Origin: Leucoraja erinacea
Lineage: Eukaryota
Reading direction: 5' to 3'
NCBI RefSeq assembly: GCF_028641065.1
Contig: NC_073384.1
Coordinates: 16,430,001 to 16,494,000 of the forward strand
Length of the DNA stretch: 64,000 bases
In this document: positions 32,705 through 59,875 of the stretch, piece by piece
Numbering within the stretch: the first letter of the stretch is position 1
Layout of the letters: each line of letters starts with the position of its first letter
Translations under genes and position numbers: made by a program
The notes under the pieces: model-generated
Seen by the model: only the letters and a program-made list of their open reading frames with translations
What the model was told of the DNA's origin: nothing
Database searches by the model: none

Positions 32705-32843
32705 CTGTGATGTGTTGCCTCTCTGCTGAAGCACGCCAACCCTTTGACATAGAGCAGAACGACAAGGAGAATAGCCAGGAGGAAGAAGAGCGTTCCCAGG
32801 AAAGAGACCAGGAGAATTGGGACCAGATGTGAATTCCAGGCAC
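32705..32843 (-). CDS. Ig-V receptor exon 4: transmembrane helix plus juxtamembrane
   Basis: Acceptor tctacttgtgttacag is phase 1, matching the giant exon. It encodes (S)AWNSHLVPILLVSFLGTLFFLLAILLVVLLYVKGLACFSREATHH. Donor CAG/GTAAAC is phase 2. Linkage to the upstream exons is inferred from strand, phase and domain logic. Confidence 0.75.
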
Positions 32844-33477
32844 CTGTAACACAAGTAGATAGAGACAACTCAGCAATGGGCACTAGGAGAAAACACATCC
32901 CCACTCTAGGACTGTCAACCCATCTGGAGTTTGTAGAGACTGTGGAAATCCAGAGCAAGAAATTAATGTCAAAGTTAAGGATGATCGTCCTGAATGTTGG
33001 AGCAAGTATGCGGGCTGAATTGCCAACTCCTGCTTCTATTCATGTTCTGGTGTTACAGAATCATAGAGAGATACAGGACTGAAATGGGCCCCTCGGCCCA
33101 TTGAGTCTGTGCTGACCATCGATCCCCCACAAACTGATCCTACATTAACCCCATTTTATTCTCCCCACATTCTCATCAACTCCCTCTAGATTTCACCACT
33201 AACCCACCAATGGGGGATAATTTACAGTAACTAATTAACCCATCAACCCTGTGTCTCCTGGTTGTGAGAGGAAACTGGATTGCCCGAGGGAAACCCAATG
33301 TAGTCACAGGGTGAGCGTGCAAACGCCGCACAACACCATCCGAAGTCGAATGTAGGGATTAATAGAGGATTGATCCTGGGCCTCTCTACCAGATGCATTA
33401 CTGTGTGGTCCAACACACCCTTATACACAAGATAAGTAGAGTGATTGTGTGCAGTTACTGTGGCAGATAGACTTTGG

Positions 33478-33770
33478 CCTTTAAACTTTAGAGATACAGC
33501 ATGTAAACAGGCCCTTCGGCTCACAGACTCCACGCCAACCGGCGATCACCCCACACACCAGAACTATCCTTCACACCAGGGACAATTTACAGAAGCCAAT
33601 TAACCTACAAACCTGAAAGTCTTTGGAGTGTGGGAGGAAAACAAAGCACCCAGAGGAAACCTACGCGGTCACAGGAGAACGTACAAACTTTGTACAGACC
33701 CATAGTCAGTGTCAAAACCATTTGGCACTGTGAGGTATCAGTGCTACCGCTATGCCACTGTGTTGCCCAG
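33478..33770 (-). mobile_element. V-SINE (HE1-like)
   Basis: Reverse complement of the SINE at 25010. Further copies lie at about 17510(+), 29960(-), 40500-40820(-), 50590-50850(+), 62520-62790(-), 63240-63545(+) and 63815-64000(-). Confidence 0.7.
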
Positions 33771-35329
33771 GTTCAAGATAACTTGCCCACTAAATACTAT
33801 CCCATGATATGTGTTTGGCCTTGCATGCAGGGGATAAACATAGGCCATCATGGGGGAGAACTCCTTCTCTATCCTCATCGTGCCAAAGGACAGTTTGTAA
33901 CTGTCTGACACAACTGCTGGGCATCATTGCAACACCAGCTCAGGTTTAGTTCTAGGTCTCTGTCGTGTAACACTGTGTAAACCCCTCGGCTACCGAGCGG
34001 TCACCAAGACATTATTACCACTCCTGGTTGCTTGGGAGAAGTGAGTGGTGCTGGATCGATTAACATTTAGTGCTCATTCTTAATTGCCCTTAAATTGGTA
34101 GGCCTTTCCGGTTAGGGGCCATCCAGAGTCTGATTGCAGTGGAAAGTACAAAGCGGATTCACCAGAATGATCCCTATGATGGAACGATTCAGTTAGAGGG
34201 AGACTGGATAGATTAGGTTTGTTTGTGCTAGAGTGGTGGAGAATGAGCGGGGTAGCTGAACAAGGTAGAGAACATTTTGTGGCAAAGATAGGGTAGATAA
34301 TAGGAAACTTTTCCCCATGGCGGAAGTGTTTAAGTCTCAGGGACATAGGTTTAGGTTGAGCAGGTAAGAGATTTTAAGGTATTGTCATTGAATTCTCCCA
34401 TTTTAGATGACTACTTCATCTGCACCTCACTATTCTCCATCCTCTCTTCCCTGTGCTCCCCACTTTGGTCTCACGATTTCACCTCCTTTTCCCCTCCCCC
34501 TTCCACCTCTATCCTTTCCTCTTGCTTCACAATTCACTCGTCTTCACTCCTCATCTTACAACCTTTTGGCTTCCTTTCATCTCTGGACTTTGTCCACTTC
34601 TTTCCATCTCTGACTTTTGTCCACCCATCTATCAATCAACCCCCTCACCTGTATCCACCCATCATTCGCCTGTCTTTGTCCTGCCCTCACCTCTTTTCCA
34701 GCTTTCTCTCACCTAGCAGAATCAGGGTCCCGACCCGAAACGTCACCTATCCATGTCTTCCAGAGATGCTGCCTGACCAGCTGAGTTACACCAGCAATTT
34801 GTGTCTTTTTAAAGAGGATTAGAGTTGGTCTGAGGAAGAATTTTGTTCCCTCAAGAAGGTGGTTAGAATCTGAAATGCACTGTCTGATGGTTTGTTGAAG
34901 GGCAAGACACAGAGTATTTACAAAGTATTCGAATGAGCATTTGAATCACCAAGGCAGTGAAGGCTATGGACCAGGTGCTGGTAAATGCCAGTAGTACAGA
35001 TAGGTACTTCATCAGAAGGGTCTAGGGTCTACTCTTTGCTGTATGACTCTATAAATCTGTGACTAATTGATATTTCTGGAGTCACATACCAGTTGGACCA
35101 GGTAAGGACAGTGGCTATCACCCTGAAGGACATGAGGGAACCAGTTGCCTTCTTGGAACAATTGTGGTTTTGTGGTTACAGTTACTGAGACCATCCTTTT
35201 TTTTTTAATTACATGTTTATTTATAAATCAACTCATATTCCAGGTTTATTTATCAATTGAATTCCGTTTTATGCACCGGTCTTCACCATAAAGGGCACTG
35301 CAATATCCATATGGTAACAGAGGGGCTAA

Positions 35330-37920
35330 TTTCAAATAACAGGGAAGAACTTGAACAAATCTCAATCACAAGGGATAAAATATTAAAGGCTAAAAGTGTA
35401 CAAATCGCCAGGGCCCAATGGCATGAACCCAAGAGGTTTAAAGCAAATGGTTGGAGACATGGTGGACTCATTTGCAGAGATTTTACAAAAATAATTAAAT
35501 TCTGGAAATTTGGAAATTTGGAAATTTGGAAAACAATGTGACTCCCTTATTTGAAAAGGGACAAAGGCAGAAGGCAGGGAACTATCATTTCTTGTTGGCA
35601 AGCTGCCAGAGTCAATAATCAAAGGAAACAACAAATTGTTTGGGAAAGCTGAATATTATAAGAACCTAGTCAACATGGTTTGATGAGCAGTGAATGAAAT
35701 TGAGGAGAGGGAGATTTGCTGCACGGAACCGGTTGAAGTCATAGTCATAGAGTCATACAGCATGGAAACAAGCTTTTCGACCCACCACGTCCATGCCAAC
35801 CAGTGGGCACCCATCCGTTTATTCCCCTCTTCCAGCGTTTGATCTGTTGCCTTGTATGCCTGGATGATTCAAGCACGCATCCAGTCAGTTCTTGAATGCT
35901 GTAGTGTATTCAACTTTCCAAAGGGCATTTGACCAGCTACCATGTAAGAGGCAGGTGCATGAATTAAGAACCAAGGGTCCTGGAGGAAGTATGTTTGCAT
36001 GTATGAAAACTTGTAGACATGGAGGGATCAGAGACTAGAAATAAATGGGTCTTCTACAGGCTGAATGGATGTTGCTGGCGGAGTACCCCAGGGATCGGTT
36101 CTTGAATCTCAATTGCTTACTATTTCCATAAAAAAATCTGGAGGAGGGACAGAATGTTTCCATATCGACTGATGAATCAAAAATAGATGTGTAGGGAGGA
36201 ACTACAGATGCTGGTTTAAATCGAAGACAGACACAAAAGGCTGGAGTACCTCAGCAGGTCGAGACCCTTCTTCAGACTGAGAGTCAGGGAAAAGGAGAAC
36301 AAGAGATATAGACGGTCCTGAGGTGAAATGAATGGAAGATAAAAATAGATGGTATGTGGTGATGAGGCCATTGTGATTTTGCAACGGGATCTAGACAGAA
36401 TGAGTAACGATGAAAATGGCAAGTGGAGTTGAATGGAGCATCAGAGGCTGAGGGGAGATCTGATCGAAGCAGTGAATATGTATGAAATATACATAACATT
36501 ATTTATGATTTAGAATTATGAGACATCGTTAGGGTAGACAGTCAGAACCTATTCCCAGGGTGGAAATGTCAAAGACTAAAGGCCATAACGTTAAGATGAG
36601 AGTGGCGAAAATTTAAAGATGAGCGGGGAAGGAAGGGGTGGTTGTGGGGGTAGATACTATAATGACATTTAGGAGGCTTTTAGATAGGGACATGGATATG
36701 CAGGGAATGGAGCCATATGCAGGCAGAGATTAGCTCAATTTAGCATTCGGCACAGTCATTGTGACTGAAGGGCCTGTTCCTGTGCTGCACTGTTGCATGT
36801 TTTATGTTCAAATGTGGGGAAGTGTAAGGTCAAGCTCATCAGGTAGAGGAATCAAAAGGTGAATATTGTCAAAATGAAGAGAGACTGCAAATGGGTGAAG
36901 TTCAGACGGATCATGGTGTTCTAGTGCATGAATTACAGCAAATTAATACTGTAGCCAAGTCCAACTGGTAGCTACAAGGGAAAATGGCACATTTGCCTTT
37001 ATTGCAAAGGGGTCGGAGTTTAAGAATAGGGAGGTTGTGTTCCAGAGGTCCCAGGTGTTGGTGATACCTCACCAGTGCACAGTTTTGCTCCCCTTACATA
37101 ATAATGAATAAAGTAGCATTGAATTCTGCATACAGGAGATTCACACGCCAATTCAAAGGATGAGAAGGTTGGCTTATTAAGGAAGGCTGATCAGTTTACA
37201 TCTGTATACTCTGGAGTTTAGAAGAACAAGGGTAACCATATTCAAACATATAAGGTCTTGAAAGGTTATGATTGGGTGCTGGGTTGTTTCCATTTGTTGG
37301 ACCGTCTTGAACAAAGGGACATAACTGCAAGATATCGGGTTAAATCGAGAAAGCTGGAAGATCTCAGCAGGTCAGGTGACAAGAGGTGTAGATTGATGCT
37401 TTGAATCGAGACCTTACAACAGGACTGTGGGAACAGGATAAACCGTCAGTGCATAACAGTCCATGAAGGCTGTGGAAAGTGGGGAGGGGTGAGTCAGAGG
37501 CTGGTAGATGATGTGGAACAAAATGATGGGCAGAGGGAACCAAATGGGGGAGTGGTAGAAATGGGAAAGGGAAAGAAAGAGAGAAAACTGGGTGGATTGA
37601 GTGTGTGTGGAAGGAAAACACCAGGGAACGGGTCATCTGAATCAATTCTGGTTTTTGCTCCATATTCCAGCATCTGTAATCTCTTTTCTCTTCTCTGCAG
37701 AATAAGGTGCTGATCATCTAAAACTGAGATGTGCAGACATTTCCTCTGAGAAATCAGTTAACTTCTGGAATTCACTGCCCCCAAAGGTGGTGGATACCAG
37801 ATTAGTAGATTTAAGGTGGAGATAGATAAATATTTGAATGATCAAGGAGTTGAGGGTTATGGGGGATGGGTAGAGTTGAGAATTGAGGCTAGCATTGATC
37901 AGCCATGATCACAATGAATG
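35330..37920 (+). mobile_element. Old CR1 LINE with nested CR1, SINE and Penelope-terminal insertions
   Basis: RT motifs (SQHGL, FPKGI.., GVPQGSVL) interrupted by younger repeat fragments. Confidence 0.6.
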
Positions 37921-42380: not shown

Positions 42381-43056
42381 AAGTACTTCACTGAGATATA
42401 TTTGCCCAGGCTAGTCTGATAGCACCTCCTACATCCACACAACCTCAGGACAGCAAGTGCATGCAAACGCCACCACCTGCAGCTTCTCCTCCAAATCACA
42501 CACCATGTTGGAAACATATTATTTGTCCATCATGGTTGGTGTGTCTAAATCGTTAATCATTATTGTACTGAAGAGCCTTGTGGATGTTTTAGAGCAATTT
42601 GGTCAGAGGCTGCATAATGGATATTTGCCAACTGTGATATCAAAGTGGAAGGAAATGAAATGAGCAGATGTTCCTGAGGCCACTCGGCAGCTTCACTAGC
42701 TCTTACTTGGAGCACTTGCTCTGTGTGATCGGGGATATGGACTGCGCTGGGAATACTGGGACTTATTGTCCATCCCCCATCAGAGGAGACTACTGAGAGC
42801 CACACTTGGAGTGCCGGCTACAGGTTACCTTCCCTGAAGGGGGAGAATGCAGCAATCGGCTTTTTTCAACAATCCAGGAGGTTTGCGATTGTCCCCACTG
42901 AGACTTTTTAATTTCTTGGCATTTTTATTTTTCTGAATTTATGTTAAGCAACTCCCAAGGTGGGGGTTGAACTCATGTCCCTGGCTGCTAGTCCAGTAAC
43001 CTGACCACTACACTACCGTCCCTGTATTTTAGGAAGGAAAGATGAATTGCACATAC

Positions 43057-46000
43057 TTGCGGTAGTGGGCTCAGTTCCGTTTCGGCTGATCTCTTCAGTG
43101 GTCACGGTCCATTCAGTCTCATTCCTGGATTCCTCGCCATTAATTCCAGTCTCATTCTCCCCGCTCCTAGATGACTCTTCAGGCTGAACTTTCTCACTCC
43201 GACTCCAGGAGATCCCTCCCTGTGTTCCGCTCAGCTTGGGGCCGAAGCGAGATGGCCCTTCATTGTCCCCCAGTAAATCATTCCCAATCCAGGATTTGGT
43301 TCCATCCGTCCCTTTCAGTTCCTTTTCATTCTTAGAAGCCTCTCCATAGTTCATGTATTGCACACTCTTCTTTGTGGACACATTTTCAGTGCTTGCATTT
43401 AAGTCATTCCCAATCCCGGAGATGTTTCCCCTGGTGATGTTCCGTTTGAATGCATTCCTGGCCGTCTCTTGGCCAGTTTCATTCACCTTAATCCCAGTTT
43501 TTGATACACTTCCAGCCACTTCATTCATATTCTTGGACAATAAGCCATTGGTTTCATACGACATAAATATCTTGTCATTGGTTTTACTTTCTTTCCCAGT
43601 CCTGGAGACTTCTCCAATTGCTGCCTTTTGTTTAGACGTATTTCGAGTAATTTTGTAACTGGTTATTTTCGATCGTTTCTCAGTCCTGGGCATTATATAA
43701 GCAGCTCCATTCATCTGCCTCTCTATCAAGGAGACGTCATCGCTGGTTCCAGACAGTTTACTCTCATTCCAGGATCTGATTGAAATGTCCTCATTTTTCA
43801 TGAACCTGATACTGGATGCCTCGCCTTTTCTATCCCGTTCATGCTCATTCCGTGAAGTTTCTTCCTCAGTTCCACTCGGCTCAGTCCCATTCCAGGTTAT
43901 TTGTCTAATGCTCACATGATTATTCCTGAAGCTCGATGCCTCTCTGATCACTGCCTTAACATTAGAAACGTTTCTGGAAATGTCACTGTTGGCTACAGTG
44001 GATGATTTATCTCCGCTTGTTGGAGTCAGCTCATTCCCATTCTTGGCTACCTCCCCACTGGCTCCATTCACTTTGCTCCCACCTGTGGCTGTACCTTCAG
44101 TGGTTCCATTCAACTGATTTCCATTCCAGAAAGCATCCCCATGAGTTATATTCGGTTTAGATGTGTTGATGTATATCTTGTCACCAACTCCTTTCAGCTC
44201 TCCACCCATTCTGTTCAGTTCATTCACACTCAAGGAATCATTTTGATTATTTCCATTCTTGGAAGTATTTTTATCGGTTATGTTCACCTCATTCTCAATT
44301 GAAGACGCCGTATCATTGGTAATATTTTGCTTATTCCCAATTTCTTCCATCTCTTCCTGGGTCCCATTCAATTCCATCTTGTTCCACGGTATTTCTCCTT
44401 GAGTTTCACTCTGCATTTTCCCACTATTTGGCTTCTCATCACCTTTCCCATTCATTTTCTGCTGACTCACTGACTGTGCATGTTTGGCTCCAATCGTTTT
44501 ACTCCCGGCTTTTGACACCCCTCCATTGGCTTTGCTCGGACTATTCTTGATTGCCGATGATTTTCCACTGTTTACTTTTTGTTTGGATGCTTTTCTAGAT
44601 AGTGCGTAATTAGTTGCTTTCTTCCCCATTCTTGTGTCATTGTTACCAGTACCTGATATCTCTGCGCATGTTTGATTTCGCTCAGTTCTGTTTCCCTCTT
44701 CACTGGGCACATTGAGTTCATTATCATCCCTGGATAGTTCTCCACTGACTCCAACCGACTGATTCTCAATCAATGATGAATTTCCATTCATCTCACCCAG
44801 TTCATTCTCAGTGGTGTATATCACCCAATCTGAAGCATATTGGTCTGATAAGTTCCTGGATATTTTACCATTATGTTTCTTTTCATTCCAGTTTATATCT
44901 TCATTGATTTCATTCAATGGACTCCTGACAAAAGGTCCATTAGACTCACTCCCATTCCTGGGCATCTCTTCAGAAGTCCCATTCATCTGATCCTTGTTGC
45001 AAAACATATCACCACAGGATCTATTTTGTTTCATTACATTACTGGCTGTTTCTTCACTGGTTCCATCCAACTCATTCCAAATCCAGGATGTCTCCCCAGT
45101 GGTCAGGTTTTGCACTGAGACATTGCCAGATATTTCACCACTATTGATAACTTTCCCAGTCTGGGCTATTTTATCATTGGTTCCCTCTAGTTCATTCTTG
45201 TACTGGGATAAGCTTTCATTTGATCTATTTGGATATACTTCATTCATTACTTGATTCTGTCCAGTTCCACTGGGCTTGTTCGCAACTACGGATCGATCTA
45301 TAGTCGTTACATTCCCATCACTTCCAACCAAGGTCGATTGGCTTCTGGTTCCAATCAATGCTACTGCCTCACCGGTGCCATTGAGCTCACTTCCATTCCT
45401 GGCAATCTCTTCACCATTAACAAGGCTCTCCATGTTCCCATCAGTAGCATTCAACTGATTTGTATTCCAGGAATCATCACCATCGGTTGTACTTTGTTTG
45501 GATGCATTCCCTGGTATTTCGTTGTTGGATCCTTGCGATTCATTCCCAAACCAAAGTAAAGGTTCATCAGTTCCGTTTAGCTCATTCCCATACACAGATC
45601 CATCTCGAGTAATTCCACCAGGATCAGTGTTGTTGGATACATTCAAATGGCCAGTACTTAAAATGCCTGAAACATCTCCATTCACATCATTCGCAATCGA
45701 TAACGTCTCAACTCTGGTTCCATTCACCATATTCCCAATCTGTGAACTATCATTGGATTCATGCACTACATTCCTAATATTTGATCTGTCATTTGATCCA
45801 TGCACCACACTCCCAATCTGTGAACTATCATTGCACTCATTCATTACATTCCCAATCCATGGAGTCTCTTCATGGGGTCCATTCGCCACTTTCTCAATCT
45901 GTGCACTCTCATTATTAGATCCATTCACCACATTCCCAATCGACGGTGTCTCCTCATGGGATCCATGCACCGCATTCCCAATCCATGCACTCTCATTATT

Positions 46001-49000
46001 AGATCCATTCACCACGTTCCCAAGCTGTGCACTATCATTGGATCCATTAACCATATTCCCAATCCATGTACTCTCACTATTGGATCCATTCACCACATTC
46101 CCAATCTGTGAACTATCATTGGATCCATTTATCACATTCCCAATCCATTGTGTCTCTTCATGGGATCCATTCATCACATTCCCAATCTGTGAACTATCAT
46201 TTGGTTCATGCACCACATTCCCAATCCATGGACTCTCATCATTGGATCCATTCATCACATTCCCAATCTGTGAACTATCATTTGGTTCATGCACCACATT
46301 CCCAATCTGTGCACTCTCATCATTGGATCCATGCACCACACTCCCAATCTGTGAACTGTCATTGCACTCATTCATCACATTCCCAATCGATGGTGTCTCC
46401 TCATGGGATCCATGCACCACATTCCCAATCCGTGCACTCTCATTATTAGATCCATTCACCACATTCCCAAGGTGTGCACTATCATTGGATCCATGCACCA
46501 CAGCCCCAATCCATGCGCACTCGCATTATTGGATCCTTTCACCACATTCCCAATCGACGGTGTCTCCTCATGGGATCCATTCACCACATTCCCAATCTGT
46601 GAACTATAATTGGATCCATGCACCGCATTCCCAATCTGTGAACTATCATTGCACACATTCAATACATTCCCAATCCATGGAGTCTCTGCATGGGATCCAT
46701 TCATCACATTCCCAATCCATGGACTCTCTTCGTGAGATTCATTCACCACGTCCCCAATCAATGGAGTTTCATCAATGGATCCATTAATCGCATTCCCAAT
46801 CCATGGAGTCTCATCACGGGTTCCATCCACCACATTTCCAATATGTGTGGTATTCTCACTGGACCCATTCACCGCATTCCCAATCCATGGAGTCTTATCA
46901 CTGGATCCATTCACCGCATTCCCAATCCATGGAGTCTTATCACTGGATCCATTCACCGCATTCCCAATCCATGGAGTATTATCACTGGATCCATTCACCG
47001 CATTCCCAATCCATGGAGTCTTATCACTGGATCCATTCACTGCATTCCCAATCCATGGAGTCTTATCACTGGATCCATTCACTGCATTCCCAATCCATGA
47101 AGTCTGGTCACTAGATGCACCTGAGTTCACCCCAGTATCTGATATCTCACCCCTTTTTTCACTCATATGGGCCGCAACCTGTGAAACCTTTCCAGCAGTT
47201 CCACTTTCATGAGTGTCAATCCTTGATGTTTCCTTTGATGTTGGTTTCACCTTGTTCCCAATCCTCGATTTTTCCCTTGTGTTTTCATTCAGATTATTCC
47301 CACGCTTTGCCTTTTCTTTTGAAGCATTGTTGGATATTGTGTAACTGATTATTTTCACTTTCTTCCCAACCCTGGAAATCCCATAGCTGGTTGTGTTCCA
47401 TGCATTCCCATTTTTTGGTATCTCTCCATTCTTTCTATTCAGCTCATTGGTGTTCATTATCATCTCTCGCTTGGTTTGATTATATCTTCCCCCACTTTCA
47501 TTCAAATTATTCAAACCCCAAGATCTCTCGTCAGCGACTTCACTTAGTCTATTCCCGAATATCAAACCACTTGCTTGATAATTTTTTTTGCTAATCTCAG
47601 CTGATTCTTTTTTTTTATTCCAGTGCTTTGAAGTCCATGATATTTTTCCAGTAGATGGATTCAACTCATGACCATCTCCAGACATCTCTTCATCTGTTCC
47701 ATTTATCTCATTCCCATCCATGGATATCTCTCCAGCAGTTTCATTGACCTGATTTCCATCCCCGGATATCTCTCCGCCAGTTCCCTCATTCCCATCCACA
47801 GTTCTATTGAACTCGTTCCCGTTCTTGGATATCTCTCCATCTGCTCCAATAGGCTTATTCCCATTCACGGATATCTCACTTCTAGTCCCATTAAGCCCAT
47901 TCCCATCCATGGACATCTCTCTATCCATTCCATTAAGCTTGTCCCCATCCCGGGATGTCCTGTCACCAGATCCATTAAGCCCATTCCCTTCCACGGCTGT
48001 CTCGTCAACAGTTCTATTTAGCACATTCCCATCTCCGGATATCTCTTCACTGGTCCCATCTGTCCCATTCCCCATCTGCCCAGTATCGCCAGGGCTCTCA
48101 TTTTGATTATTCTGAGAAATGGGCGACTTACCATTGCTCACATTTTGTTTGTAGAGATCCCCTGATTTGTTCCCAATGGTTAACTGAGGGTATAACGTGC
48201 CACCATTTTGATATTGCTCACTCCCGGATGAATCTTGATCAGTATTAATCATCATATTCTCACTCCTGGAAATGCCTCCATTGGTTGTATTTTTTTCTGA
48301 TTCATCGCTGGATAACTTCAGCTCAGTCCCACTTCGGGGTCTCTCTCCACCTTCTCCATTCATATCATTTCCAATCGTGGATATCTTTCCATTAGTTCCA
48401 TCCAGCTCTTTGACAATCCAAAATATTGGCCTGCTGAACTCGTCCTCGCTCGCTAAATTCTTTCCACTTGTTAGGTTTTGCTCATTCCCTGTCCAAGCTA
48501 CTTCTTCGGTGCCTGGAGTTTGTTTGGAAGCATTTCTGTTCAGTTCATCGTCAGTCACATTTGGATAATTCCAAGATGTCACCTCATTGATTTCATTCAG
48601 GTCATACTCAACCTTGGATTTCTCTCCACTGGTTGACTTCACTTGAGTCACATTCCTGTCGATGTCCCTGCTGATCACAATGACCTGGGTCCCGTTCTCG
48701 CTGATATCTCCCCACACTGTGCAGTAATAGACAGCAGAGTCATTGAGCATCACGTTTGTGACCGTCAGGATGAAGCTGCTGTTTGAGACGTCTTTGAACG
48801 GCTGGAACCGCTCAGTGAAGCCTGGTCTCCTTCGTATGCTGCCTCCTGCCTCGTGTGTTAAAACCCACTCCATGTCCTGCCCGGGTAGTTCTCGGTACCA
48901 GTGGACGTCAGTGTTTCCCACTTCAGCGTTCTCCATGGAGCACCGTAGCCGTGCTGTGTGACCCTCAGTGACACGCTCCAGCCTCGGGGATTGGATGAGG

Positions 49001-49016
49001 ATCGGAGAATTTGTAT
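43057..49016 (-). CDS. Ig-V receptor exon 3: second V-set domain fused to a ~1870-aa N-glycosylation-rich repetitive stalk; one apparent 2-nt frameshift near 46516
   Basis: Acceptor attttttcctctaag; exon starts at 49016. V domain reads PILIQSPRLERVTEGHTARLRC..VHWYR..FILTVTNVMLNDSAVYYCTVWG..GTQVIV. Donor GCA A/GTATGT at 43056. The exon is 5960 nt; removing 2 nt gives 1986 codons in phase 1-1 and joins ORFs 46456..48936 and 43013..46501. Confidence 0.85.
45700..47110 (-). repeat. Coding tandem repeat, 39/42-bp units (13/14 aa, e.g. SSDKTPWIGNAVNG and SNDSSQIGNVVHG)
   Basis: Recurrent cattcccaat...gatccat units; five near-identical 42-bp copies at about 46870-47095. Confidence 0.95.
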
Positions 49017-51319
49017 CTTAGAGGAAAAAATAGCAATGACCTTAATGATCATTCTGAAGCTTACAAAATGCATCCAACTGTTTGTCTCCCTCCCCATCAA
49101 CACCTGCAGGTCAGACTGAAACCGCACGCAAATTGGAGGAACACCACCTAATATTTTGCTTGAGCAGGGAGTTCTCTAATTTCAAGTAACCCTTGCCTTC
49201 CCTCTCTCTCTCTGTCCCTCTCCCACCCTAGAGATCCTGCTAGTTTCACTGTTTGTATCATTTCATTGTCATCTCTTTCAAGCCAACAATGGACCATTGT
49301 GGACACCATCTTTCTTGAGTCATCATTACCGGCTCTGAGTTGTTCTGTACCTCTTCATCTCTCGAGTTCCCACCTCTCCGGCTCTCTGTCTGAACAAGTG
49401 TCTCGACCAAAAGTGTCACTGATTCCTTTTCTCCAGATATGCTGCCAAATCTGCTGAGTTACTCCAGCATTTTGTGCCTATCTGCAGGTGACAGTTTGAT
49501 GCGCCCAAGATATTATAGTTGCACAGAACAGTATCAAACAAACTGCTGCTAGTTTCAGCTGAGGGACATAGAACATGGAACACAGAACAATACAGCACAA
49601 AACCCTTAAGCTCTCAGTCTGTGGTGAAAATGATACCAAGATAAACTAATCTCCTCAGCCTGCAAGGGATCCATATCCCTCCATTACATACATAACCATG
49701 TGCCTGTCTAAAATAATCTTAAACAACATTATTGAATCTACCTCCACCACCACCTCTGGCAGCCATGCCTCCACCACTCTCTATGTAAAGAAACGGAACC
49801 CGCACATCTCCTAGAAAGCACATCAATGCCTCTACTTCCTCAGAAGGCTTACAAAGTTCAGCATGTCCCCAACATCTGCAAGTTTCAGCCGAAGGGCATC
49901 AAAATCAGCTTCAGCCCTATTTAAGACTTTAATTTGAGGACCACTCCTATCTTTCTCCGTAACTACTGTGAAAGGGAATTATGGCAACTGCTCTCACAGT
50001 TCTCCCCCACGGGCACTCCCGCCACTTGCCCTACCACAGTTCCTAAGAGGAGGTCCAGTGTTGCAACCTTCAGTAGGGTCCTCTATATATTAATGAAGAA
50101 AGTTTTGATGTGCTTCTATCAGATCTCCCCTCAACTTCCGAATCTCCAGGGAAAGAAATCCACGTTAGTCCAACCTCTCCTTATAGCTAATACCTGCTAA
50201 TCTAGGTGGTAGCTGGAAAACTTTTTCTGCACCCTTCCCAAAACATACCTATCCTTCCTGTTATGGGATGACCAGACTGCAAACATTCAATTCTTAAGGT
50301 TTAGTAGTCTCTCTAGGAAGAGCACGCAAACACTCAATCCCGTGCCACCTTAAGAACATTTTAATGTTGAGCAATTGCAAATAAATGAAGTTTAAAGGGA
50401 TGGCGGTGTTATAATGCACGAATCAATACAAGTTAACTGGCAGATCACACAAGTAGTAATGAAGACAAATTGCGTGAATGCCTTCATTGCATAGAAAATT
50501 GGAGTTTAAAAGTACGGAAGTTTGTTGCAATTATACAGGGTGTTGGCGAGGCCACACCTAGAATACTGAACACAATTTTGGTCCCAGTGCATTGGGCACA
50601 GCAGTCTTACAGCGGTTGCAGTGCCAGGGACCCATATTTGATCCTGACTACGGGTGCTATCTGTGCGGAGTTTGTATGTTCTCCCCGTGTTGGTTTCCTC
50701 CCAAGACGTACAGGTTTGCAGGTTAATTGGTTTGGTGTAAATTGTCCATGGGTGTGTGTAGGGTAGTGTTAATGTGTGGGGATCGTTGGTCGGTGCGGAC
50801 TCGATGAGCCGAACGGCCTGTTTCCGCGCTGTATCTCTAAACTAAACAACCTTAAAACCTTCACTTTGGCAGATCCTAGTCATTCTAACCCCACAGATAT
50901 TCTGATGGGCAGACATCTGGCAAAGGTAAATGCAGCAAGTAGAACTTCCATTATAATGATGTTGTTTGGAGAAGTAGAATATCCTGTCCATAATGCTCAT
51001 CTCTCAATGATCCTGAGAGATGGCAGCAAAGCATCCCTGCTCCATTAGTCCAATCATCTCATTCTGAAGCCATCAGACCATTTGCCTCCCTGCCACTCGC
51101 TGCACCTGCAACAAGCTTGCACCATCAGCAACAATGCACATGGGTGCGTTGCACCAGGTCTTGTTGCACCTCCCCTTTACCAGTCTATCAACCTTCCTAT
51201 TATTATGTAGGGAGGAACTGCAGATGCTGATTTAAACAGAAGACGGGTGCAGTAAGAAGCTAGAGTAAGTCAGCAGGTCAGGCAGCATCTCTGGAGAAAA
51301 GGAATAGGTGACGTTTCAG

Positions 51320-53357: not shown

Positions 53358-53708
53358 TGCTTATGATCAGCTGGGTTCCTTCTCCGTAAACCGAGCCCCA
53401 CACACTGCATGTGTAAATGGCAGCATCACTGGGCTGGACTCCAACAATGGTCAGGACGAAGCTGTTACTGGCCAGATCCCTGGATGAGTGAATGTGATCA
53501 GAGATGACGTGCGACTTGGTGATGTAGTTGTAGACGGAGTGAGTCAGCAGCCACCGCCTCTTGTCCCCCGGCACCAGCCGGTCCCAGTAGACTGTGGTGG
53601 CCTCTACACTGTAGTTCTTCATGGTGCATTGCATCTCTGCCGTCATTCCCTTCTGGAGTCTCATCACCTCGGGGTGTTGCAGGAGGGTCGGAGTTGCCTG
53701 GAGGCCTG
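53358..53708 (-). CDS. Ig-V receptor exon 2: first V-set domain with J-like motif
   Basis: NAGNAG acceptor (ttccag/cag; exon start 53708 or 53705, both phase 1). Encodes GLQATPTLLQHPEVMRLQKGMTAEMQC..VYWDR..FVLTIVGVQPSDAAIYTCSVWGSVYGEGTQLIIS. Donor A/GTAAGT at 53357. Confidence 0.88.
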
Positions 53709-53914
53709 CTGGAACATCAGAACATTACAAGGACCTAGGAGCCAGGAATAGGATACCCGACCCATCAAGATCCTTGCCATTCAATATGATCGAGGCCCAT
53801 CTACCCCAGGCCTCAATTTCTCCTTTCTGCCAATTCCCCATTGTCCTCAATCTTCCAATCTCTCAGAAATGTGTCTGCATCCTCTTTGCAAATACTCCTC
53901 TGCAACAATTAGAC

Positions 53915-55060
53915 ACCTTCATGGATAGAATAGGTTTGGAGCGATATGGGCCATTTCCTTGTATCTTGCAAGGTGGTAGCTCTTGTCTGTATTGGTTTAG
54001 GGTGACATTTAATAAGGTCCTGCATGGCAGGCTGGTCCAGAAGGTTAAGGTTCAAAGAATCTAATGTAAATTTGATAAATGGTGATAGGAGGCAGAGGGT
54101 GGTGGTGGAAAGATGTGTTTTTATTGTAAATCTGTGCAGTATATCACAGGATCAGAGTTGTGAACCTTGTTATTTATTATATAAATTGAGAACTTTGAAG
54201 TGAATGAAAGATGAATGATTACAGGTGACAGAAAGGTTGTAGGTGTTGTGGACAATGAGGAAGGTTGACTAAGGAGACATCAGTTTACAGATCAGGTGGA
54301 AGTTTGAGCAGAGCTCTGGCATAGTCAATGTGAGTTGATGTATTTTGGGAAGTCACATTAGATGTAGGATATATACAGTAAATCTAGAGTGCGAGGGAAT
54401 GTTGATGAACAAAGGGACCTTGGTGTTCACGTCCAGAGCACCTTGAAAGTAACAGGATAGTGGACAGGGTGGTGAAAAATTCACATGGCATGCTTGCCTT
54501 TGTTGATCAGAGCATCATGTTATGCGGCAATTTTACAAAACACTGCTAGGACTGCACTGGTTGGGGTGTTGTGCGTGATTCTGGTTGCTCTAAAGGGAGT
54601 GCAGAGGAGATTCACCAAGATGTTGCCTGGATTGGAAAATTGTTATGGGGAGAGATTTGCAAGGCTGGACTTTCTTTCTGTGGAGTGATAGTAGCTGAGG
54701 GTTGACTGATGGGGTATATGAAATTATAGGAGGCATTGATAGAGTTGGTAGGTTAGGTAGAATCTGTTACCCAGAGTAGGAGAATTAAAAACAAAGGGGC
54801 TTAGCTTTAAGGCGAGGGGAAAGAGAAAAAGGGATCTGTGAAACATTTTCATAGAATGATTGATATCTGGAACTTGATGCTGGAGGAGATGGTGGAATCA
54901 GATAAGATCACTACATTTATGCAACATTTAGACACAAATAGCAAGGCATAAACATATATAGTCGTAATGCAGAAACATGGGATCTGTATGGATGAATAAA
55001 GAGATCAGCATGTTTATGGTGACCAAATTACCTGTTTTTGAGCTTTATGACTATGACATT
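53915..55060 (+). mobile_element. Degenerate CR1 LINE
   Basis: FNKVLHGRLVQKVK, DLGVHV and GVQRRFTKMLPGLE motifs. Confidence 0.7.
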
Positions 55061-55971
55061 TAAGGTTGGGATTGATTGGAAGACGAGACAAATTGGGCTT
55101 GAGCTAGATAACACATGAAAGAAAGCAGGAGAACGCCATTCAGCCCTTCAAGCCTGTCCCACCATTCACTATGACCACAGCCTGATCTACACTGGCCTCA
55201 ACACCCCTTCTGTGTTCCCTACATCCCTCAAATCCTCGATCTTTCAAATATTTAATGATCTCCACTTAATGACGCGTCTAACATCTGAGTAACTTAGCGG
55301 GGCTGTGTCATATGGACTTAAATGGCTGTAGAATCTAGAGGGTGAGGGGGTCAGTGGAGAGTGAAAGAGGTTCAGCCTTCTACGTCGGACCAGTGCCTTG
55401 ATTGGGAACACAGTGAGTGGGTGAGCAAGCTGTGAACCTGCCCTGGATCACCTAGAAGATTCCAGGAAGCTGGAGGTGAGGCCTTACCAAGGAGAAGGGT
55501 GGAAAACACACCCTTTGAACCCAGACAGTTCAGGCATTCCCCTTGAACCTGTGACCTACTCTCACAATCCCAGTCATTTTGTAACAATTGACCTGCTATT
55601 TAGGGATCAAGATGTGAAAGTTAATAATGATTTAAAAATACAAAATGGATTCCGATGAAACTAAGACAAGCCTCAACCTTCTTCTATTACATTGCAAGGC
55701 CAGGGAAATGCACTAACCTTTGCTTTCAGTACATTAACAAAGTTAGCAGACTGTTGATGTTCTCTTTCCAATAACATAAGCGAGATAACAAGCACAAGTT
55801 TCACGAATGTCTCCTCTATAACATAAACATAGGAACTAACCCTTGTTCCACAAGATTATGATGTGCATCATAAGTAGAAAAAAACAAAATGCTTGTTCTG
55901 CAGAAATATAACCGTCTCATATAACCATATATGGCTAACCCTTCCTCTATCAGAAGAACCTGTCAATCTTC

Positions 55972-56127
55972 TGTCAATCTTCGTCTTCGTTCGTGTGGCG
56001 TGCACAGCCTAAAGTTGTAGGGCTACTTGTTCTATTTGATCTTCTGTTTGTGCATGTCAAGTTGATTGCATTAGTCGAAACAGGGCGGACCACGTGAAGG
56101 TTGCGATCTTCCACCCCGTCAATCTTC
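55972..56127 (-). mobile_element. Short retroelement 3' end (RTE-like) with apparent target-site duplication
   Basis: gtcaatcttc on both flanks; (gaagac)-type tail on the minus strand. Confidence 0.4.
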
Positions 56128-56497
56128 TGACGCTGTCAATCTTAAGGATCTGTCAATCTTAAGAAGCAAGAGGCTGTACTAAACTTTATAGATAATGTAT
56201 TGCTGAATCGTCGAGTCAAGGGGCATATATACAAGTACTGAAATCATTGTCCATTTCTGTGGGACTTCTCTGCATAGTCTGTTATCAGCATACTGTTAAG
56301 AGTTTTACCACACCCGCCTGGCGAAATAAATAGATTACTGCTTATACTGATTTTATTTGCATTACTGCCTGTTTAAGCATATTTGGGCCACGACAGAGGG
56401 AGCTGATAGAGAGACAGGAGAAGAATTTGCATTCACATAGCAGTTCAGCACATTGCAAGGTCATTTTTAACCCATACAATAATAGATCTATTTGAAT

Positions 56498-56528
56498 CTG
56501 AAGAAGGGTCTTGACCCGAAACGTTGCC
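56498..56528 (+). ncRNA. Minimal hammerhead-ribozyme motif in a Penelope-derived repeat
   Basis: CTGAAGA-A-GGGTC-tt-GACCC-GAAA-CG-TT-gcc. Confidence 0.45.
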
Positions 56529-59284
56529 TATTTCCTTCGCTTCATATTTGCCTCACGCTGAGTTCATAGCATTTTTGTCTACCAATAATAGATCTGAGTT
56601 TTACACTAACACGTGGTCTCAGGAGAAAGTACAAATTGTTTACCTGAGGTGAGGACAAACCCAGGTCTGTGGGAAAACTGTAGATCTAATCTGGAACAAA
56701 AGTGGAAGAACTTTACAAAAAGGTAACATCTGTCGAGACTTTTTTGGTTGTCAGGTAACAATGGGCATTGAGGACGAAACGTTGAATCATTCTTGTGACA
56801 AACATCTTTTTTTTTGCATTATCCTTTTTTTTCTGCATTATTTATTTGTAATTTATCTGTAACATGTGTATGTTAAGTTTTAGTGTGTTGTCTATGTGCC
56901 TGTGAAGCTTACATGTAATTGTACCTGTACCTCACCATACGTGCATATGGCACAAAGGGTGGTGGGTGCATGGAACAAGCTCCCAGAGGAGGTAATTGGG
57001 GCAGGTACAATCACAATGTTTAATAGACTTTAGAGAGGTACATGGATAGGATAGGTTTAGAAGAATATGGGCCAAACACAGGCTGGTGCGACAAGTGTAG
57101 ATGGGGCATGTTGTTTGGCGTGGGCAAGTTGAATGGAAGGGCTTGGTTCCACATTGTATGACACTATGATTCTATGACTACAACTATCAACTCGACTTGA
57201 CTTACACTACACCAGAGGAAGCCCGAGTTAGCATAGGAAGGACCCTCATTAGGAACACATTGCTTAAATAACCTGTTACGCTTATCCTGGTTGAGATAAG
57301 CAGCCAGAATATCAGGAAAATGAACCAGTCCCGCCCAGTACAGCAATTAGTCGACTTTGGTGGAAGCAATAGCTACGTTTCAGTACATCTCTGAAGTCTC
57401 AGAAGCAAGACTGCAGCCTTTTAGTCTGACATTGCCTGAGGCCGAGGTGTGTGGATCTGGCATGGACTTCCTCCAGTGCACAGTCACACACGATGAGGAA
57501 GAGGGTCACACAATCCTACTCACATTAAAGGGCAAGCAAAAACTCTAGCAAACAGTCCCATGGTTGTCCCTGGGAGAAGATACAGGAAACTGCTCTCCAT
57601 GAGTGAACATTGGGTTGAGAAACCAGGGACATGGTGTCCTGTTCTAGTAACATGCTGGAGGTTGCAATCATTTCACATGAAATTATAAACATAAAAATAA
57701 CAAAATGGCAAAATATTATTTTGTAAGCAACGGCACAAATCAAGCTTGTAACCTTCATCTTGTGGAGTCATAGAGTCAAAGCATCATAGAGTTATACAAC
57801 ATGGACGCAAGCACTTCATTCCAACTTGACCATGCTGAACAAGATGTCCCAACTAAGCTAGTCCCAATTGGCTGTGTTTGACCCATATCAAGCTGATCTA
57901 TCTCTCCCTCCTAACTCCATAACTCACAGCTGATCTATCTCCCCCTCCTAACTCCATGCTTCTGCTTTCTCCCCATAAACTCTGACACCTGTGCTAATCA
58001 AGAATGTCGAGCATTGTCATCCACAAAACTTAATATTGACGCAGAGTGCTTCCTGTAGCAAATTAAAACTTAAATGCAAACCATTTATATTTTAATGGAG
58101 ACACGATTCAGAAATAAACCTGTCACTGACTACAGGCATCCTTTGTCAGCACCTCATCTATTTCATGCACCCGCCCTCTCACTCCCTCTCCTCCCGGACA
58201 AATGAAATTATAGAGACTGCTGTTTTTTACCTTCCGACCTACCAGCCTCCACATTCAACAGATGATCCTTTATGAAGTCTGCAGTGTCTGTGGGCTGCTG
58301 CTCATGAATCACCCTGTCTGTTGGTGATGATCAACCTGTCTGCTGGTATTGATTAACGTATCTGCTGGTGTTGACCCAGCCATTCTGCTGGTGCTCTGCA
58401 GGGAGGCTCAATTACCCACCTTGTGCAGAAACCCAGGTAACAGGAGCAGAACAGTTAATACTCATAAGTGATAGTAGAATTAGGTCATTCGGCCTATCAA
58501 GTCTACTCCGCCATTCAACCATGGCTGATCTATTCCTCCCTCCTAATCCCATTCTCCTGCCTTTCCCCCATAACCTCTGACTAATGAAGAATCTATTGAT
58601 CCCTGCCTTAAAAACATCCACTGACTTGGCCTCCAAAGAATTCCACAGATTCACTACCCTCTGACAATAAATTTCTCCTCATCTTCCAAAAAGAACGTCC
58701 TTTAATTCTGAGGCTATGACCTAGAATCTCCCACACCTGAGTGGAATGATACGTCACAGGACATTCTGAACAGGGATGTCGTGGGTGACAGGCCTGTCAC
58801 TTTAAAATGGGTCTCAATTTTGAGGTCACCGACGACGTCCCTGTTCAGAAAAATGCTGCACGCTTGGTGGAAGATGGGAATCCCAGGGGAGAGAAAAGGT
58901 GGGGGGGGGGGGGAAGGGGGGGGGGGGGGGGGGGGGGGTGGGTGAGGGCAGAGACACCCTCAGCCCATGGGGTCCACACGTGTCAACATGAATCAAGCAG
59001 ACTGGATGGTTGTTTGTAGAGGGCAGATCAGTGACCCAGGAATATTGTCCTGAAGGAAGGGCTATTGGTCCCACCACTGCGAGATGGCTCAAAGTTCTGG
59101 TCCCCAGATTCTGGTGGATTCAAAGTGTGGAGAGAGAGTATTGAAAGACGTAAAGGATGATCCCAGACCAGCAGAGAGAAGGCAGATTGGCAGAGCTCCC
59201 TGGACTTCTGAGTTTCTTGAAGAGATAGATGGGATCATAGAGACACATGAGACAGCAGACACTGGAATTTTCAGGAAAAATAGC

Positions 59285-59575
59285 AGAGGATATAGGTTTA
59301 AGGTGAAGGGGAAAAGATTTAATAGGAATCTGAGGGGTAACCTTTTCACACAAATTGTAGTGGGTGTATGGAACAAACTGCCAGAGGAGGTAGTTGAGGC
59401 AGGGGCTATCCCAACATTTAAGAACCAGTTAGACAGATACATGGATAACACAGGTTTGCAGGGATATGGGCCAAACGCAGGCAGGTGGAACTAGTGTAGA
59501 TGGGACATGTTGGTCGGTGTGGGTAAGATGGGCCGAAGGGCTTGTTTTCCGGCTGTATCACCCTATGACTCAATG
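59285..59575 (+). mobile_element. CR1 LINE 3' end
   Basis: RGYRFKVKGKRFNRNLRGNLFTQIVVGVWNKLPEEVVEAG. Confidence 0.8.
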
Positions 59576-59774
59576 ACCACTGGAGGAACTTAACGGCTCA
59601 GCAGCATCTATGGAGGGAAATGGCCAGTTGGTTGAGACTGTCTGGATATGGATGGTTTGCTGTACCACAGATGTGGGAAACAACCAAGCTATAGTTCACA
59701 CATTGACGGATGGACCCACATCACTTTGAATCTGTCCGATCGCAGATCCCCAACAAAAAGAGACTGGTACTTAC

Positions 59775-59826
59775 CCAGAGCAGCTGAGAGGGCCAGGAAC
59801 AGAGATGGGAGCAACCGCCTCGCCAT
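59775..59826 (-). CDS. Ig-V receptor exon 1: signal peptide
   Basis: aatATGG Kozak context; MARRLLPSLFLALSAAL plus G, then a perfect GTAAGT donor. Phase 1 matches the V1 exon, the classic Ig leader-exon layout. Confidence 0.82.
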
Positions 59827-59875
59827 ATTGGAAGCAAGATCCTCTGACACTGTCGACACTCCCCGAAAGGGTGAA

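What the first reader, a model, noticed from the sequence alone, without database searches (positions are those of the whole stretch)
32705..59826. Giant V-V-stalk-TM immunoglobulin-superfamily receptor (about 2170 aa) that I cannot assign to a named family
Seen: four minus-strand exons with canonical splice sites and mutually compatible phases (52 + 351 + 5958 corrected + 139 nt). They give a signal peptide, two antigen-receptor-like V domains, a stalk of about 1870 aa packed with N-x-S/T sequons, and an uncharged TM. Knowledge: V-domain-plus-stalk receptors (TIM, CD300, CD8, CD96, skate MDIRs) have stalks of tens to a few hundred residues that are S/T/P-rich and O-glycosylated. This stalk is far longer, Pro-poor and Asn/Gly-rich, and shares one exon with V2. 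Inference: a chondrichthyan-specific receptor that could hold V domains far above the glycocalyx or mucus (pathogen capture, adhesion, gamete or epithelial barrier). This is the best candidate in the window for an undescribed system.
Basis: partly seen in the sequence, partly recalled or inferred. Interest (0 to 1): 0.85.

Follow-up and report, generated by a model that had tools for sequence, protein, structure and literature searches.

The report
Skate giant-stalk two-V-domain membrane glycoprotein
A little-skate gene encodes a membrane protein with two antibody-like domains on a very long repeat stalk full of sugar-attachment sites; it is conserved among skates but has never been studied, and its expression is still unshown.

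Summary
The window is Leucoraja erinacea. RefSeq XP_055495034.1 matches it exactly but starts after the frameshift, so it lacks the V domains and carries a misleading "kinase" name. Rhinoraja longicauda has an intact 1,999-aa ortholog with the same SP-V1-V2-stalk-TM-short-tail layout. Three other genomes (coded organisms) lack the 2 nt that break the frame here, and their other indels are multiples of 3. The stalk matched nothing else among 1.84 billion representative proteins.

The gene is not family-less. V2 and the TM exon derive from a conserved, unnamed elasmobranch multi-V receptor family with ITIM-like tails, but this gene has lost that tail. The stalk is Asn/Gly/Ser-rich with 14-aa periodicity and about 96 sequons, which are preferentially conserved.

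No RNA evidence was obtained, and function is inferred. I read it as a new variant of the Ig-V-plus-mucin-like-stalk kind.

The parts
59875..59881 (-). TATA-like box 49-55 nt upstream of the start codon. An in-frame ATG at 59901-59899 lies upstream of it; the Rhinoraja model uses the corresponding ATG.
   Evidence: Read by eye. P0048 N-terminus. Inference only.
59775..59826 (-). Exon 1: start codon and signal peptide, 52 nt, ends in phase 1 with a GT donor.
   Evidence: 15 of 17 residues identical to P0048.
53358..53708 (-). Exon 2: V1, a V-set domain with a J-like end, phase 1 to 1, AG/GT borders.
   Evidence: Pfam V-set E 1.2e-14. 94.8% identical to P0048 domain 1. Groups only with its ortholog in the domain tree.
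48667..49016 (-). First part of exon 3: V2, a V-set domain with a J-like end. No GT where a V exon would normally end, so it reads on into the stalk.
   Evidence: Pfam V-set E 2.2e-16. 90% identical to domain 2 of the L. erinacea 3-V receptor P0033. Lies in the skate domain-2 clade (support 95).
43057..48666 (-). Remainder of exon 3: stalk of about 1,870 aa, rich in Asn, Gly and Ser, with 14-aa periodicity and about 96 sequons. GT donor after 43057.
   Evidence: About 80-82% identical to P0048 outside the array. No Pfam family.
45677..47105 (-). Regular tandem array inside the stalk: 42-nt (14-aa) units, about 34 copies, partly alternating 14- and 13-aa units (81-nt period).
   Evidence: TRF. 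34 units found with a unit HMM. The array is shorter in Rhinoraja (about 258 aa).
46514..46516 (-). Site of the 2-nt excess that shifts the frame in this assembly. It leads to a stop at 46458-46456.
   Evidence: 'Left out 2' at 46515 in contigs of all three DNA runs X1, X4 and X6.
48126..48134 (-). Donor-like site (last exon base 48132, 8 of 9 consensus positions), in a phase that fits the TM exon. It is a candidate for a short-stalk isoform.
   Evidence: Untested.
32705..32843 (-). Exon 4: uncharged transmembrane segment plus the start of the tail, 139 nt, AG/GT borders, phase 1 to 2.
   Evidence: Present in P0045 at residues 1108-1152. 86.7% identical to P0048. 44-54% identical to family TM exons.
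28133..28166 (-). Exon 5 (coding part): the last 11 residues and a TAG stop. The tail has no ITIM- or ITSM-like motif. The extent of the 3' UTR was not determined.

Best explanation
This is a real, skate-lineage gene for a type I membrane glycoprotein. It has a signal peptide and two non-rearranging V-set domains with J-like ends. A stalk of about 1,870 residues follows, built from 14-residue Asn/Gly/Ser-rich units, most carrying an N-x-S/T sequon. Then come one uncharged TM helix and a tail of about 24 residues with no signalling motif.

It descends from a conserved elasmobranch family of multi-V receptors with ITIM/ITSM-like tails. The donor at the end of a domain-2-type V exon is gone, so the exon runs on into a 42-nt repeat that expanded and then degenerated, and the long signalling tail was lost. 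How that came about is inferred.

Shown here: the exon anatomy, the family descent of V2 and the TM exon, an intact ortholog in a second genus, frame conservation in three more genomes, preferential conservation of sequons, and the absence of the stalk elsewhere in the searched protein collections.

Inferred: the 2-nt frameshift in this assembly is an assembly error or a private allele. The stalk is a heavily N-glycosylated, mostly non-globular spacer, working like a mucin stalk but with N-glycans. It holds the V1-V2 head far from the membrane, so the protein captures or competes for ligand, or mediates or prevents adhesion, without signalling itself. V2 may share its ligand with the canonical inhibitory receptors, which would make this a long-reach decoy or tether.
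For: Exon borders and phases come, and the V-set hits. The coding frames are open for 852 and 1,148 codons, against 71-198 stops in the other frames.

RefSeq XP_055495034.1 matches the window exactly for 1,106 exon-3 residues, the TM piece and the tail piece. It joins 43057 to 32843 to 28166.

The R. longicauda protein P0048 (1,999 aa) has the same layout and is intact. Identities are V1 94.8%, V2 89.7%, stalk 80-82% and TM 86.7%.

The DNA contigs of X1, X4 and X6 all lack the 2 nt at 46515. The other four listed indels are +3, +6, +6 and -6. Array joints with known inserts net 126, 84, 492 and 96 nt.

Of the 40 substitutions shown (of 323), 16 are synonymous, where about 8.5 are expected from the synonymous-site share of 0.213, giving omega of about 0.4.

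53 of 62 non-array sequons are kept in Rhinoraja (85%), against 65-68% for a generic i,i+2 pair.

For family descent: 44 multi-V proteins from 20 elasmobranch species match V2. V2 lies in the skate domain-2 clade. The TM exon is homologous to the family's. 35 of 40 TM-bearing family members have ITIM/ITSM-like motifs, while this gene and its ortholog have none.

The C-terminal 400 aa of the stalk is modelled as coil, pLDDT 36.
Against: The one RNA run laid (X9, about 5% of it read) gave 2 reads out of 12.9 million, both under 95% alike and both on V2, so probably from paralogs. X1, X4 and X6 are genomic DNA.

The reference sequence as it stands is frameshifted, and no DNA run shown to be of the same species covers the site.

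The RefSeq models are automatic predictions, and I could not see what supports them.

A donor-like site at 48132 is closer to consensus than the annotated donor at 43057 and is in a compatible phase.

The synonymous excess is not significant if transitions raise the neutral share to 0.30 (p = 0.12). The changes private to X1 are 13 non-synonymous to 1 synonymous.

AlphaFold models the regular array as a beta-solenoid (pLDDT 66), which fits a rod rather than a flexible brush.

Glycosylation, ligand and cell type are all untested.
Confidence: 0.6

Rival explanations
1. The gene is a recent pseudogene or null allele in the little skate. The 2-nt excess is real, translation stops at 46458-46456, and what remains is a decaying relic of a gene still working in other skates.
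For: The frameshift is in the assembly. NCBI's model starts only downstream of it. No RNA reads fell on the stalk in X9. No DNA run known to be from the same species was available to check the site.
Against: There is only one disabling change in 5,960 nt. Changes shared by X1, X4 and X6 against the window, which fall on the window's branch or on their common stem, are 12 synonymous to 9 non-synonymous (omega about 0.2). That does not look like a long-dead gene. The site lies inside a tandem array. One of the two published little-skate assemblies was built from raw PacBio Sequel reads and polished with short reads, and the other combined PacBio, Illumina and Hi-C (passages read in PMC9605692). 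I do not know which assembly the window comes from.
Confidence: 0.15
2. The main product is a short-stalk receptor. Splicing from the donor-like site at 48132 to the TM exon gives SP-V1-V2, about 179 stalk residues and the TM, and most of the 'stalk' is intron in most transcripts.
For: The site matches 8 of 9 consensus positions and its phase fits exon 4. By my own count, the annotated donor at 43057 matches 7 of 9.
Against: The remaining 5 kb stays open in five genomes, with indels in multiples of 3 and conserved sequons, which makes no sense for an intron. Both RefSeq models use the 43057 donor. The two isoforms could coexist.
Confidence: 0.1
3. The stalk, or at least its regular array, is a folded beta-solenoid rod, not a flexible glycan brush. 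That would make it a rigid spacer like the stalks of bacterial fibrous adhesins.
For: A single-sequence AlphaFold model of 45677-46501 is all-beta, with one strand per unit (pLDDT 66, pTM 0.67). VIA-align matches solenoids: CsgA Z 21.5 (rmsd 8.7), SufD Z 16.4 (rmsd 3.7) and a Ca-dependent beta-helical antifreeze protein Z 14.9 (rmsd 3.1). Ile, Trp, Asn, Gly and Glu are the better conserved residues against Rhinoraja. The array has a 27-aa super-repeat.
Against: The five models range from pLDDT 30 to 66. From recall, not from a call, structure predictors are prone to build solenoids from near-perfect repeats. Foldseek gave no hit at E <= 0.001. There is no PDB sequence match at E < 0.03. The degenerate C-terminal 400 aa is modelled as coil at pLDDT 36. 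The array makes up only about a quarter of the stalk.
Confidence: 0.15
4. The long open frame is a by-product of a minisatellite with no coding role.
For: Antisense to the array there is also a 429-aa open frame at 45498-46787, which shows that repeats alone can keep frames open.
Against: That antisense frame ends with the array. The sense frame runs through about 4.2 kb of degenerate, non-array sequence with no stop, while the other sense frames have a stop every 10-16 codons. It is also kept in Rhinoraja.
Confidence: 0.01

Closest known systems
Unnamed elasmobranch multi-V receptors with ITIM/ITSM-like tails (e.g. L. erinacea LOC129699364, P0033; 44 proteins from 20 species, under inconsistent automatic names)
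   Same: V-set domains with J-like ends. V2 is 88-90% identical to domain 2 of the skate members and lies in their clade. The TM exon is homologous.
   Different: Only two V domains, and V1 is only 42-47% identical to any family domain. A stalk of about 1,870 aa sits between V2 and the TM. The tail is about 24 aa with no ITIM/ITSM-like motif, against about 80 aa with such motifs in 35 of 40 TM-bearing members.
Ig-V plus mucin-stalk membrane proteins (TIM family, CD300g, MAdCAM-1) and cell-surface mucins (MUC1, MUC16). Their features are recalled from general knowledge, not from a call.
   Same: An N-terminal binding domain on a long, glycan-bearing tandem-repeat spacer encoded in one large exon, with a single TM and repeat number varying between species.
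   Different: The stalk is not Pro/Thr/Ser-rich: Pro 2.4-3.0%, Asn 13-14%, Gly 11-13%. Its sites are N-x-S/T sequons, not O-glycan clusters. It is several times longer than TIM or CD300g stalks.
Teleost NITRs and skate MDIRs
   Same: Germline-joined V domains on type I membrane receptors of fish. NITR V domains have J-like motifs and most NITRs are inhibitory (abstract of PMC2442602).
   Different: NITRs are described from bony fish (abstract of PMC2442602). MDIRs resemble CD300, TREM and pIgR (passages in PMC3031540). V1 and V2 each have only the canonical two cysteines.
Non-rearranging VJ genes of cartilaginous fish: UrIg, UrIg2, NKp30/NCR3
   Same: A V exon with the J-like part fused in the germline (PMC12227049 abstract and passages; PMC10751288 passages).
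   Different: UrIg and UrIg2 carry C1-type constant domains after the V, which this gene lacks. No linkage to the MHC or to antigen-receptor loci was examined.
Bacterial beta-solenoid fibres and adhesins (CsgA, EtpA, HMW1, MpAFP region IV)
   Same: They share only the fold of a moderate-confidence model of the regular array.
   Different: No sequence similarity. This is a eukaryotic, sequon-rich protein, and most of the stalk is modelled as coil.

Membership tests
Elasmobranch multi-V ITIM-tail receptor family (unnamed) | V-set domains with J-like ends, one per phase-1 exon | tested here: met
   Pfam V-set for V1 and V2. Both V exons start in phase 1. V1 ends at a phase-1 donor, but V2 has lost its donor.
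Elasmobranch multi-V ITIM-tail receptor family (unnamed) | Domain falls inside the family's domain clades | tested here: met
   V2 lies in a 5-row clade with skate domain 2 (support 95). V1 groups only with its own ortholog, at path length over 1.19 to the rest (FastTree of 174 domains).
Elasmobranch multi-V ITIM-tail receptor family (unnamed) | Homologous TM exon | tested here: met
   13 BLASTP hits, best 44% identity over 45 aa at E 1.3e-7.
Elasmobranch multi-V ITIM-tail receptor family (unnamed) | Cytoplasmic tail of about 80 aa with ITIM/ITSM-like motifs | tested here: not met
   No motif in the window gene or in P0048, against 35 of 40 TM-bearing family proteins (46 examined).
Elasmobranch multi-V ITIM-tail receptor family (unnamed) | Three or more V domains directly followed by the TM | tested here: not met
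   Two V exons and no other V-like sequence in the window. Family members have 2-9 domains, mostly 3-4.
Mucin-type (PTS, O-glycan) stalk | Pro/Thr/Ser-rich composition | tested here: not met
   Pro 2.4-3.0%, Thr about 7%, Ser 11-13%, Asn 13-14%, Gly 11-13%.
Mucin-type (PTS, O-glycan) stalk | Tandem repeats of variable number in one large exon | tested here: met
   TRF finds 42-nt units, 34.8 copies. Lag-14 periodicity elsewhere in the stalk. Array length differs between genomes.
Skate MDIR / CD300-like V domains | Extra cysteine pair in the V domain (feature recalled, not from a call) | tested here: not met
   V1 and V2 each have two cysteines only.
Teleost NITR | Sequence kinship of V (and I) domains with NITRs | not tested
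   No NITR sequence was available through the tools. The top 60 PDB hits were all antibody-type V domains.
Rearranging antigen-receptor V segment | V exon ends before the J region and is followed by a recombination signal | tested here: not met
   The J-like G-T-x-[LV]-x-[IV] part is inside both V exons. V1 ends at a splice donor and V2 reads on into the stalk.
Beta-solenoid repeat proteins | Confident solenoid fold for the repeat region | tested here: inconclusive
   The array model has pLDDT 66 with solenoid matches. Foldseek found nothing at E <= 0.001. The degenerate stalk is modelled as coil at pLDDT 36.

The most novel reading that the evidence does not exclude
The 14-residue Asn/Gly unit folds into a glycosylated beta-solenoid. 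If so, skates have evolved a rigid protein rod tens of nanometres long that presents two antigen-receptor-like V domains. It would be a vertebrate counterpart of bacterial fibrous adhesins, born from a minisatellite at a lost splice donor, and would act as a long-reach, non-signalling partner or decoy of an inhibitory receptor family.
Probability: 0.12. Interest if true: 0.8.

Novelty: new variant of a known kind. Interest (0 to 1): 0.55.

Why it matters
The finding shows how a new cell-surface architecture can arise in one step-like series: a V exon of an inhibitory receptor loses its donor, runs into a 42-nt repeat, and the signalling tail is dropped. It also points to a mucin-like spacer built on N-glycan sequons and not on O-glycan PTS repeats, which would broaden the known ways that vertebrates build tall glycocalyx molecules.

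There are two practical gains:
- The little-skate RefSeq entry is truncated and misnamed (as a Dictyostelium-like kinase) because of a 2-nt problem in a repeat.
- The parent family of multi-V receptors with ITIM-like tails is spread over 20 elasmobranch species under a dozen unrelated automatic names, and I found no name for it in the literature I could search.

If the V2 domain shares its ligand with the canonical inhibitory receptors, the gene offers a natural experiment on receptor height and decoy function.

Tried and rejected
The following led nowhere or were rejected.

- RNA support was sought. No run on record as RNA held the stretch. One raw RNA run (X9) gave 2 reads that look like paralogs. 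X1, X4 and X6 turned out to be genomic DNA: their contigs run on into the intron, and each run holds 1.2-1.8 Gb of contigs. They therefore say nothing about expression.
- Stalk homologs. Searches in length windows of 470-1,490, 640-2,035 and 1,100-3,498 aa, and a search without a length limit, found only P0045 and P0048. The ESM Atlas gave no usable hit. Pfam found no family. The PDB sequence search found nothing at E < 0.03. No stalk-like DNA or protein occurs elsewhere in the window.
- An HMM of the array unit did not detect the degenerate units (0 hits at 3 bits or more). Their periodicity rests on autocorrelation alone.
- Family name. Seven literature searches and passages from five papers gave no name for the multi-V family and no mention of XP_055495034, LOC144597072 or LOC129699364.
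- ARAGORN found no tRNA in the window, so the tRNA-like look of the sequence after exon 3 is unconfirmed.
- Earlier-findings look-ups by words gave nothing relevant.
Full report
**What is in the sequence.** On the minus strand I read five exons with AG/GT borders.
- E1, 59826-59775: ATG and a hydrophobic signal sequence, 52 nt.
- E2, 53708-53358: 351 nt.
- E3, 49016-43057: 5,960 nt.
- E4, 32843-32705: 139 nt, an uncharged hydrophobic segment.
- E5, from 28166 to a TAG at 28135-28133: it adds the last 11 residues.

The phases fit: 1, 1-1, 1-1 after the 2-nt correction, 1-2, then 2. Every piece was handled on its own, and the precursor length of 2,177 aa is arithmetic only.

**V domains.** E2 and the first 350 nt of E3 are V-set domains (Pfam E 1.2e-14 and 2.2e-16). 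Their best solved relatives are antibody V domains, but the PDB is dominated by antibodies. Each has only the canonical two cysteines and a J-like end within the same exon. They are 36% identical to each other, and the window holds no other V-like sequence.

**The stalk is coding.** E3 is open for 852 codons in one frame and 1,148 in another, while the non-coding sense frames carry 71 to 198 stops. TRF finds a 42-nt array at 45677-47105 with 34.8 copies and an alternative 81-nt period. A unit HMM finds 34 units there, with a consensus of the type W-I-G-N-V-V-N-G-S-N-D-E-T-P. The remaining 1,390 or so residues are not recognised by that HMM, but they have clear lag-14 autocorrelation (z 5.0 and 4.0) with harmonics at 28, 42 and 56. 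The Rhinoraja protein shows the same. Composition is Asn 13-14%, Gly 11-13%, Ser 11-13% and Pro 2.4-3.0%, and the two pieces hold 33 + 63 sequons. Pfam, the PDB sequence search and the ESM Atlas give nothing for the stalk.

**Identity of the locus.** A search of 1.84 billion representative proteins with the C-terminal 873 stalk residues returned one protein, P0045. This is XP_055495034.1 of Leucoraja erinacea, named 'probable cyclin-dependent serine/threonine-protein kinase DDB_G0292550'. It matches the window exactly over 1,106 exon-3 residues, the TM piece and the tail piece, so the window is little skate. That model starts at an internal Met at 46375, just downstream of the frame break. It therefore lacks the signal peptide and both V domains, and it owes its name to low-complexity Asn-rich similarity.

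**An intact ortholog.** Two further searches found only one other stalk-bearing protein: P0048, 'uncharacterized protein LOC144597072' of Rhinoraja longicauda, 1,999 aa. It has a signal sequence, V1, V2, the stalk, the TM and a short tail in one open model. Identities to the window pieces are:
- signal peptide: 15 of 17
- V1: 94.8%
- V2: 89.7%
- non-array stalk: 81.9% and 79.7% by BLASTP, 82.9% and 80.4% by global alignment, with 6-9 gap columns
- TM: 86.7%
- array: alignable only at 51-63%, and about 258 aa long against about 476 aa here

No stop or frameshift occurs in about 1,740 stalk residues of a second genus.

**The frame break and three more genomes.** I laid 43040-49035 (5,996 letters) on three contig runs and one RNA run. 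X1, X4 and X6 are genomic. Their contigs run through the donor at 43057 into intron sequence, and each run holds 1.2-1.8 Gb of contigs. They belong to three coded organisms and differ from the window by about 0.75%, 2.2% and 4.3% in the 2.8-kb C-terminal piece (21, 61 and 118 other letters).

All three lack 2 nt at 46515, exactly where the window's frame breaks. The supporting contigs are 114-179 nt long, with 1, 2 and 9 other letters. The other four listed indels are +3, +6, +6 and -6. Joints in the array with known inserts net 126, 84, 492 and 96 nt, all multiples of three, though joints in repeat contigs can be assembly artefacts.

Of the 323 substitutions, 40 were shown. Of these, 16 are synonymous and 24 are not, against a synonymous-site share of 0.213, so omega is about 0.4. 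The binomial p is 0.006, or 0.12 if the neutral share is taken as 0.30. On its own this is weak.

The changes shared by all three runs are 12 synonymous to 9 non-synonymous. Those private to X1 are 1 to 13 (Fisher p 0.004), and I cannot explain that contrast.

None of these runs is shown to be little skate. Most of X1's differences are shared with X4 and X6, which suggests it is a different lineage. So the 2-nt excess may be an assembly error or a real allele. One of the two published little-skate assemblies was built from raw PacBio Sequel reads polished with short reads, and the other combined PacBio, Illumina and Hi-C (passages in PMC9605692). I do not know which assembly the window comes from.

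**Sequons.** In the non-array stalk, 53 of 62 window sequons sit at the same alignment column in Rhinoraja (85%). A generic pair of positions i and i+2 is identical in 65-68% of cases (p 0.0008 to 0.01). Ile, Trp, Asn, Gly, Glu and Ser are kept more often (0.83-0.87) than Val, Ala, Pro and Met (0.61-0.71). This points to constraint on the glycosylation sites and on the repeat motif.

**Family descent.** A search with V2 plus the first stalk piece gave 44 proteins of 469-1,037 aa from 20 elasmobranch species. Each covers only the V2 part of the query (13-17%). They consist of 2-9 V domains, mostly 3-4, followed by a TM and a tail of about 80 aa. Of the 46 proteins examined, 40 have a TM-like segment, and 35 of those 40 carry ITIM/ITSM-like motifs. 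Their automatic names are inconsistent (IgSF3-like, SIRP-like, pIgR-like, heavy-chain-like, perlecan-like). The Atlas cluster of P0033 is an unnamed 100-member chordate cluster.

V2 is 90% identical to domain 2 of the L. erinacea three-V protein P0033 and 88% to that of Rhinoraja P0031. In a FastTree of 174 domains it lies with its ortholog inside the skate domain-2 clade (support 95). V1 groups only with its ortholog and is 42-47% identical to any family domain. The TM exon matches family TM exons (best 44% over 45 aa, E 1.3e-7). The tail of this gene and of P0048 has no such motif.

V1 ends at a GT donor. At the same position V2 has GG, and the frame simply runs on. I infer that a domain-2-type exon lost its donor and acquired an expanding repeat, and that the signalling exons were lost.

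**Structure of the stalk.** A single-sequence AlphaFold model of the array (45677-46501) is all-beta, with one strand per unit. Its pLDDT is 66 and pTM 0.67, but the five models range from 30 to 66. Foldseek found nothing at E <= 0.001. VIA-align matched solenoids: CsgA Z 21.5 at rmsd 8.7, SufD Z 16.4 at rmsd 3.7, and a beta-helical antifreeze protein Z 14.9 at rmsd 3.1. The C-terminal 400 stalk residues give pLDDT 36 and are almost all coil.

The idea is possible for the array, unsupported for the bulk of the stalk, and, from recall, predictors tend to make solenoids out of regular repeats.

**What remains open.** There is no RNA evidence. No listed holder of the stretch is an RNA run. X9 (about 5% read, 12.9 million records) put two reads under 95% likeness on V2 and none on the stalk.

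Seven literature searches and passages in five papers gave no name for the parent family and no mention of the accession or gene ids. Supplements were closed and may list it.

**Verdict.** The gene is a derived, non-signalling, giant-stalk offshoot of a conserved elasmobranch multi-V receptor family with ITIM-like tails, and it has been seen only in skates so far. I read the stalk as a mainly non-globular, heavily N-glycosylated spacer that works like a mucin stalk, and the protein as a long-reach ligand-binding tether or decoy. That functional reading is inference. It counts as a new variant of a known kind, of moderate interest.

Noticed in passing
window 15507-16397 (+): An intronless open frame of 296 aa that is a rhodopsin-family 7TM receptor (Pfam 7tm_1 E 1.1e-19, profile 2-260 of 260). 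The listed ORF begins at a TTG and seems to lack an N-terminus, so it may be truncated or start upstream.
   Followed up: partly
window 48126-48134 (-): A donor-like site inside exon 3 (8 of 9 consensus positions, in phase with the TM exon) that could give a short-stalk isoform.
   Followed up: partly
window 43040-48730, run X1: Substitutions private to X1 are 13 non-synonymous to 1 synonymous, while those shared by X1, X4 and X6 are 9 to 12 (Fisher p 0.004). Only 40 of 323 differences were shown.
   Followed up: partly
It lies upstream of a TATA-like box, so it may be outside the transcript.
   Followed up: no
window 45498-46787 (+): A 429-aa open frame antisense to the tandem array. It ends with the array and is best read as a by-product of the repeat.
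   Followed up: yes
window about 42950-43015 (-), just after the exon 3 donor: The sequence looks by eye like the head of a tRNA-derived SINE. ARAGORN finds no tRNA anywhere in the window.
   Followed up: partly
window 58896-58942: A run of about 42 G in intron 1.
   Followed up: no
proteins P0001-P0044, P0046, P0047 (other genomes): The parent family of multi-V receptors with ITIM/ITSM-like tails is present in 20 elasmobranch species under many unrelated automatic names. Its domain-2 type is 66-79% identical between the skate V2 and ray or shark members. I found no published description.
   Followed up: partly
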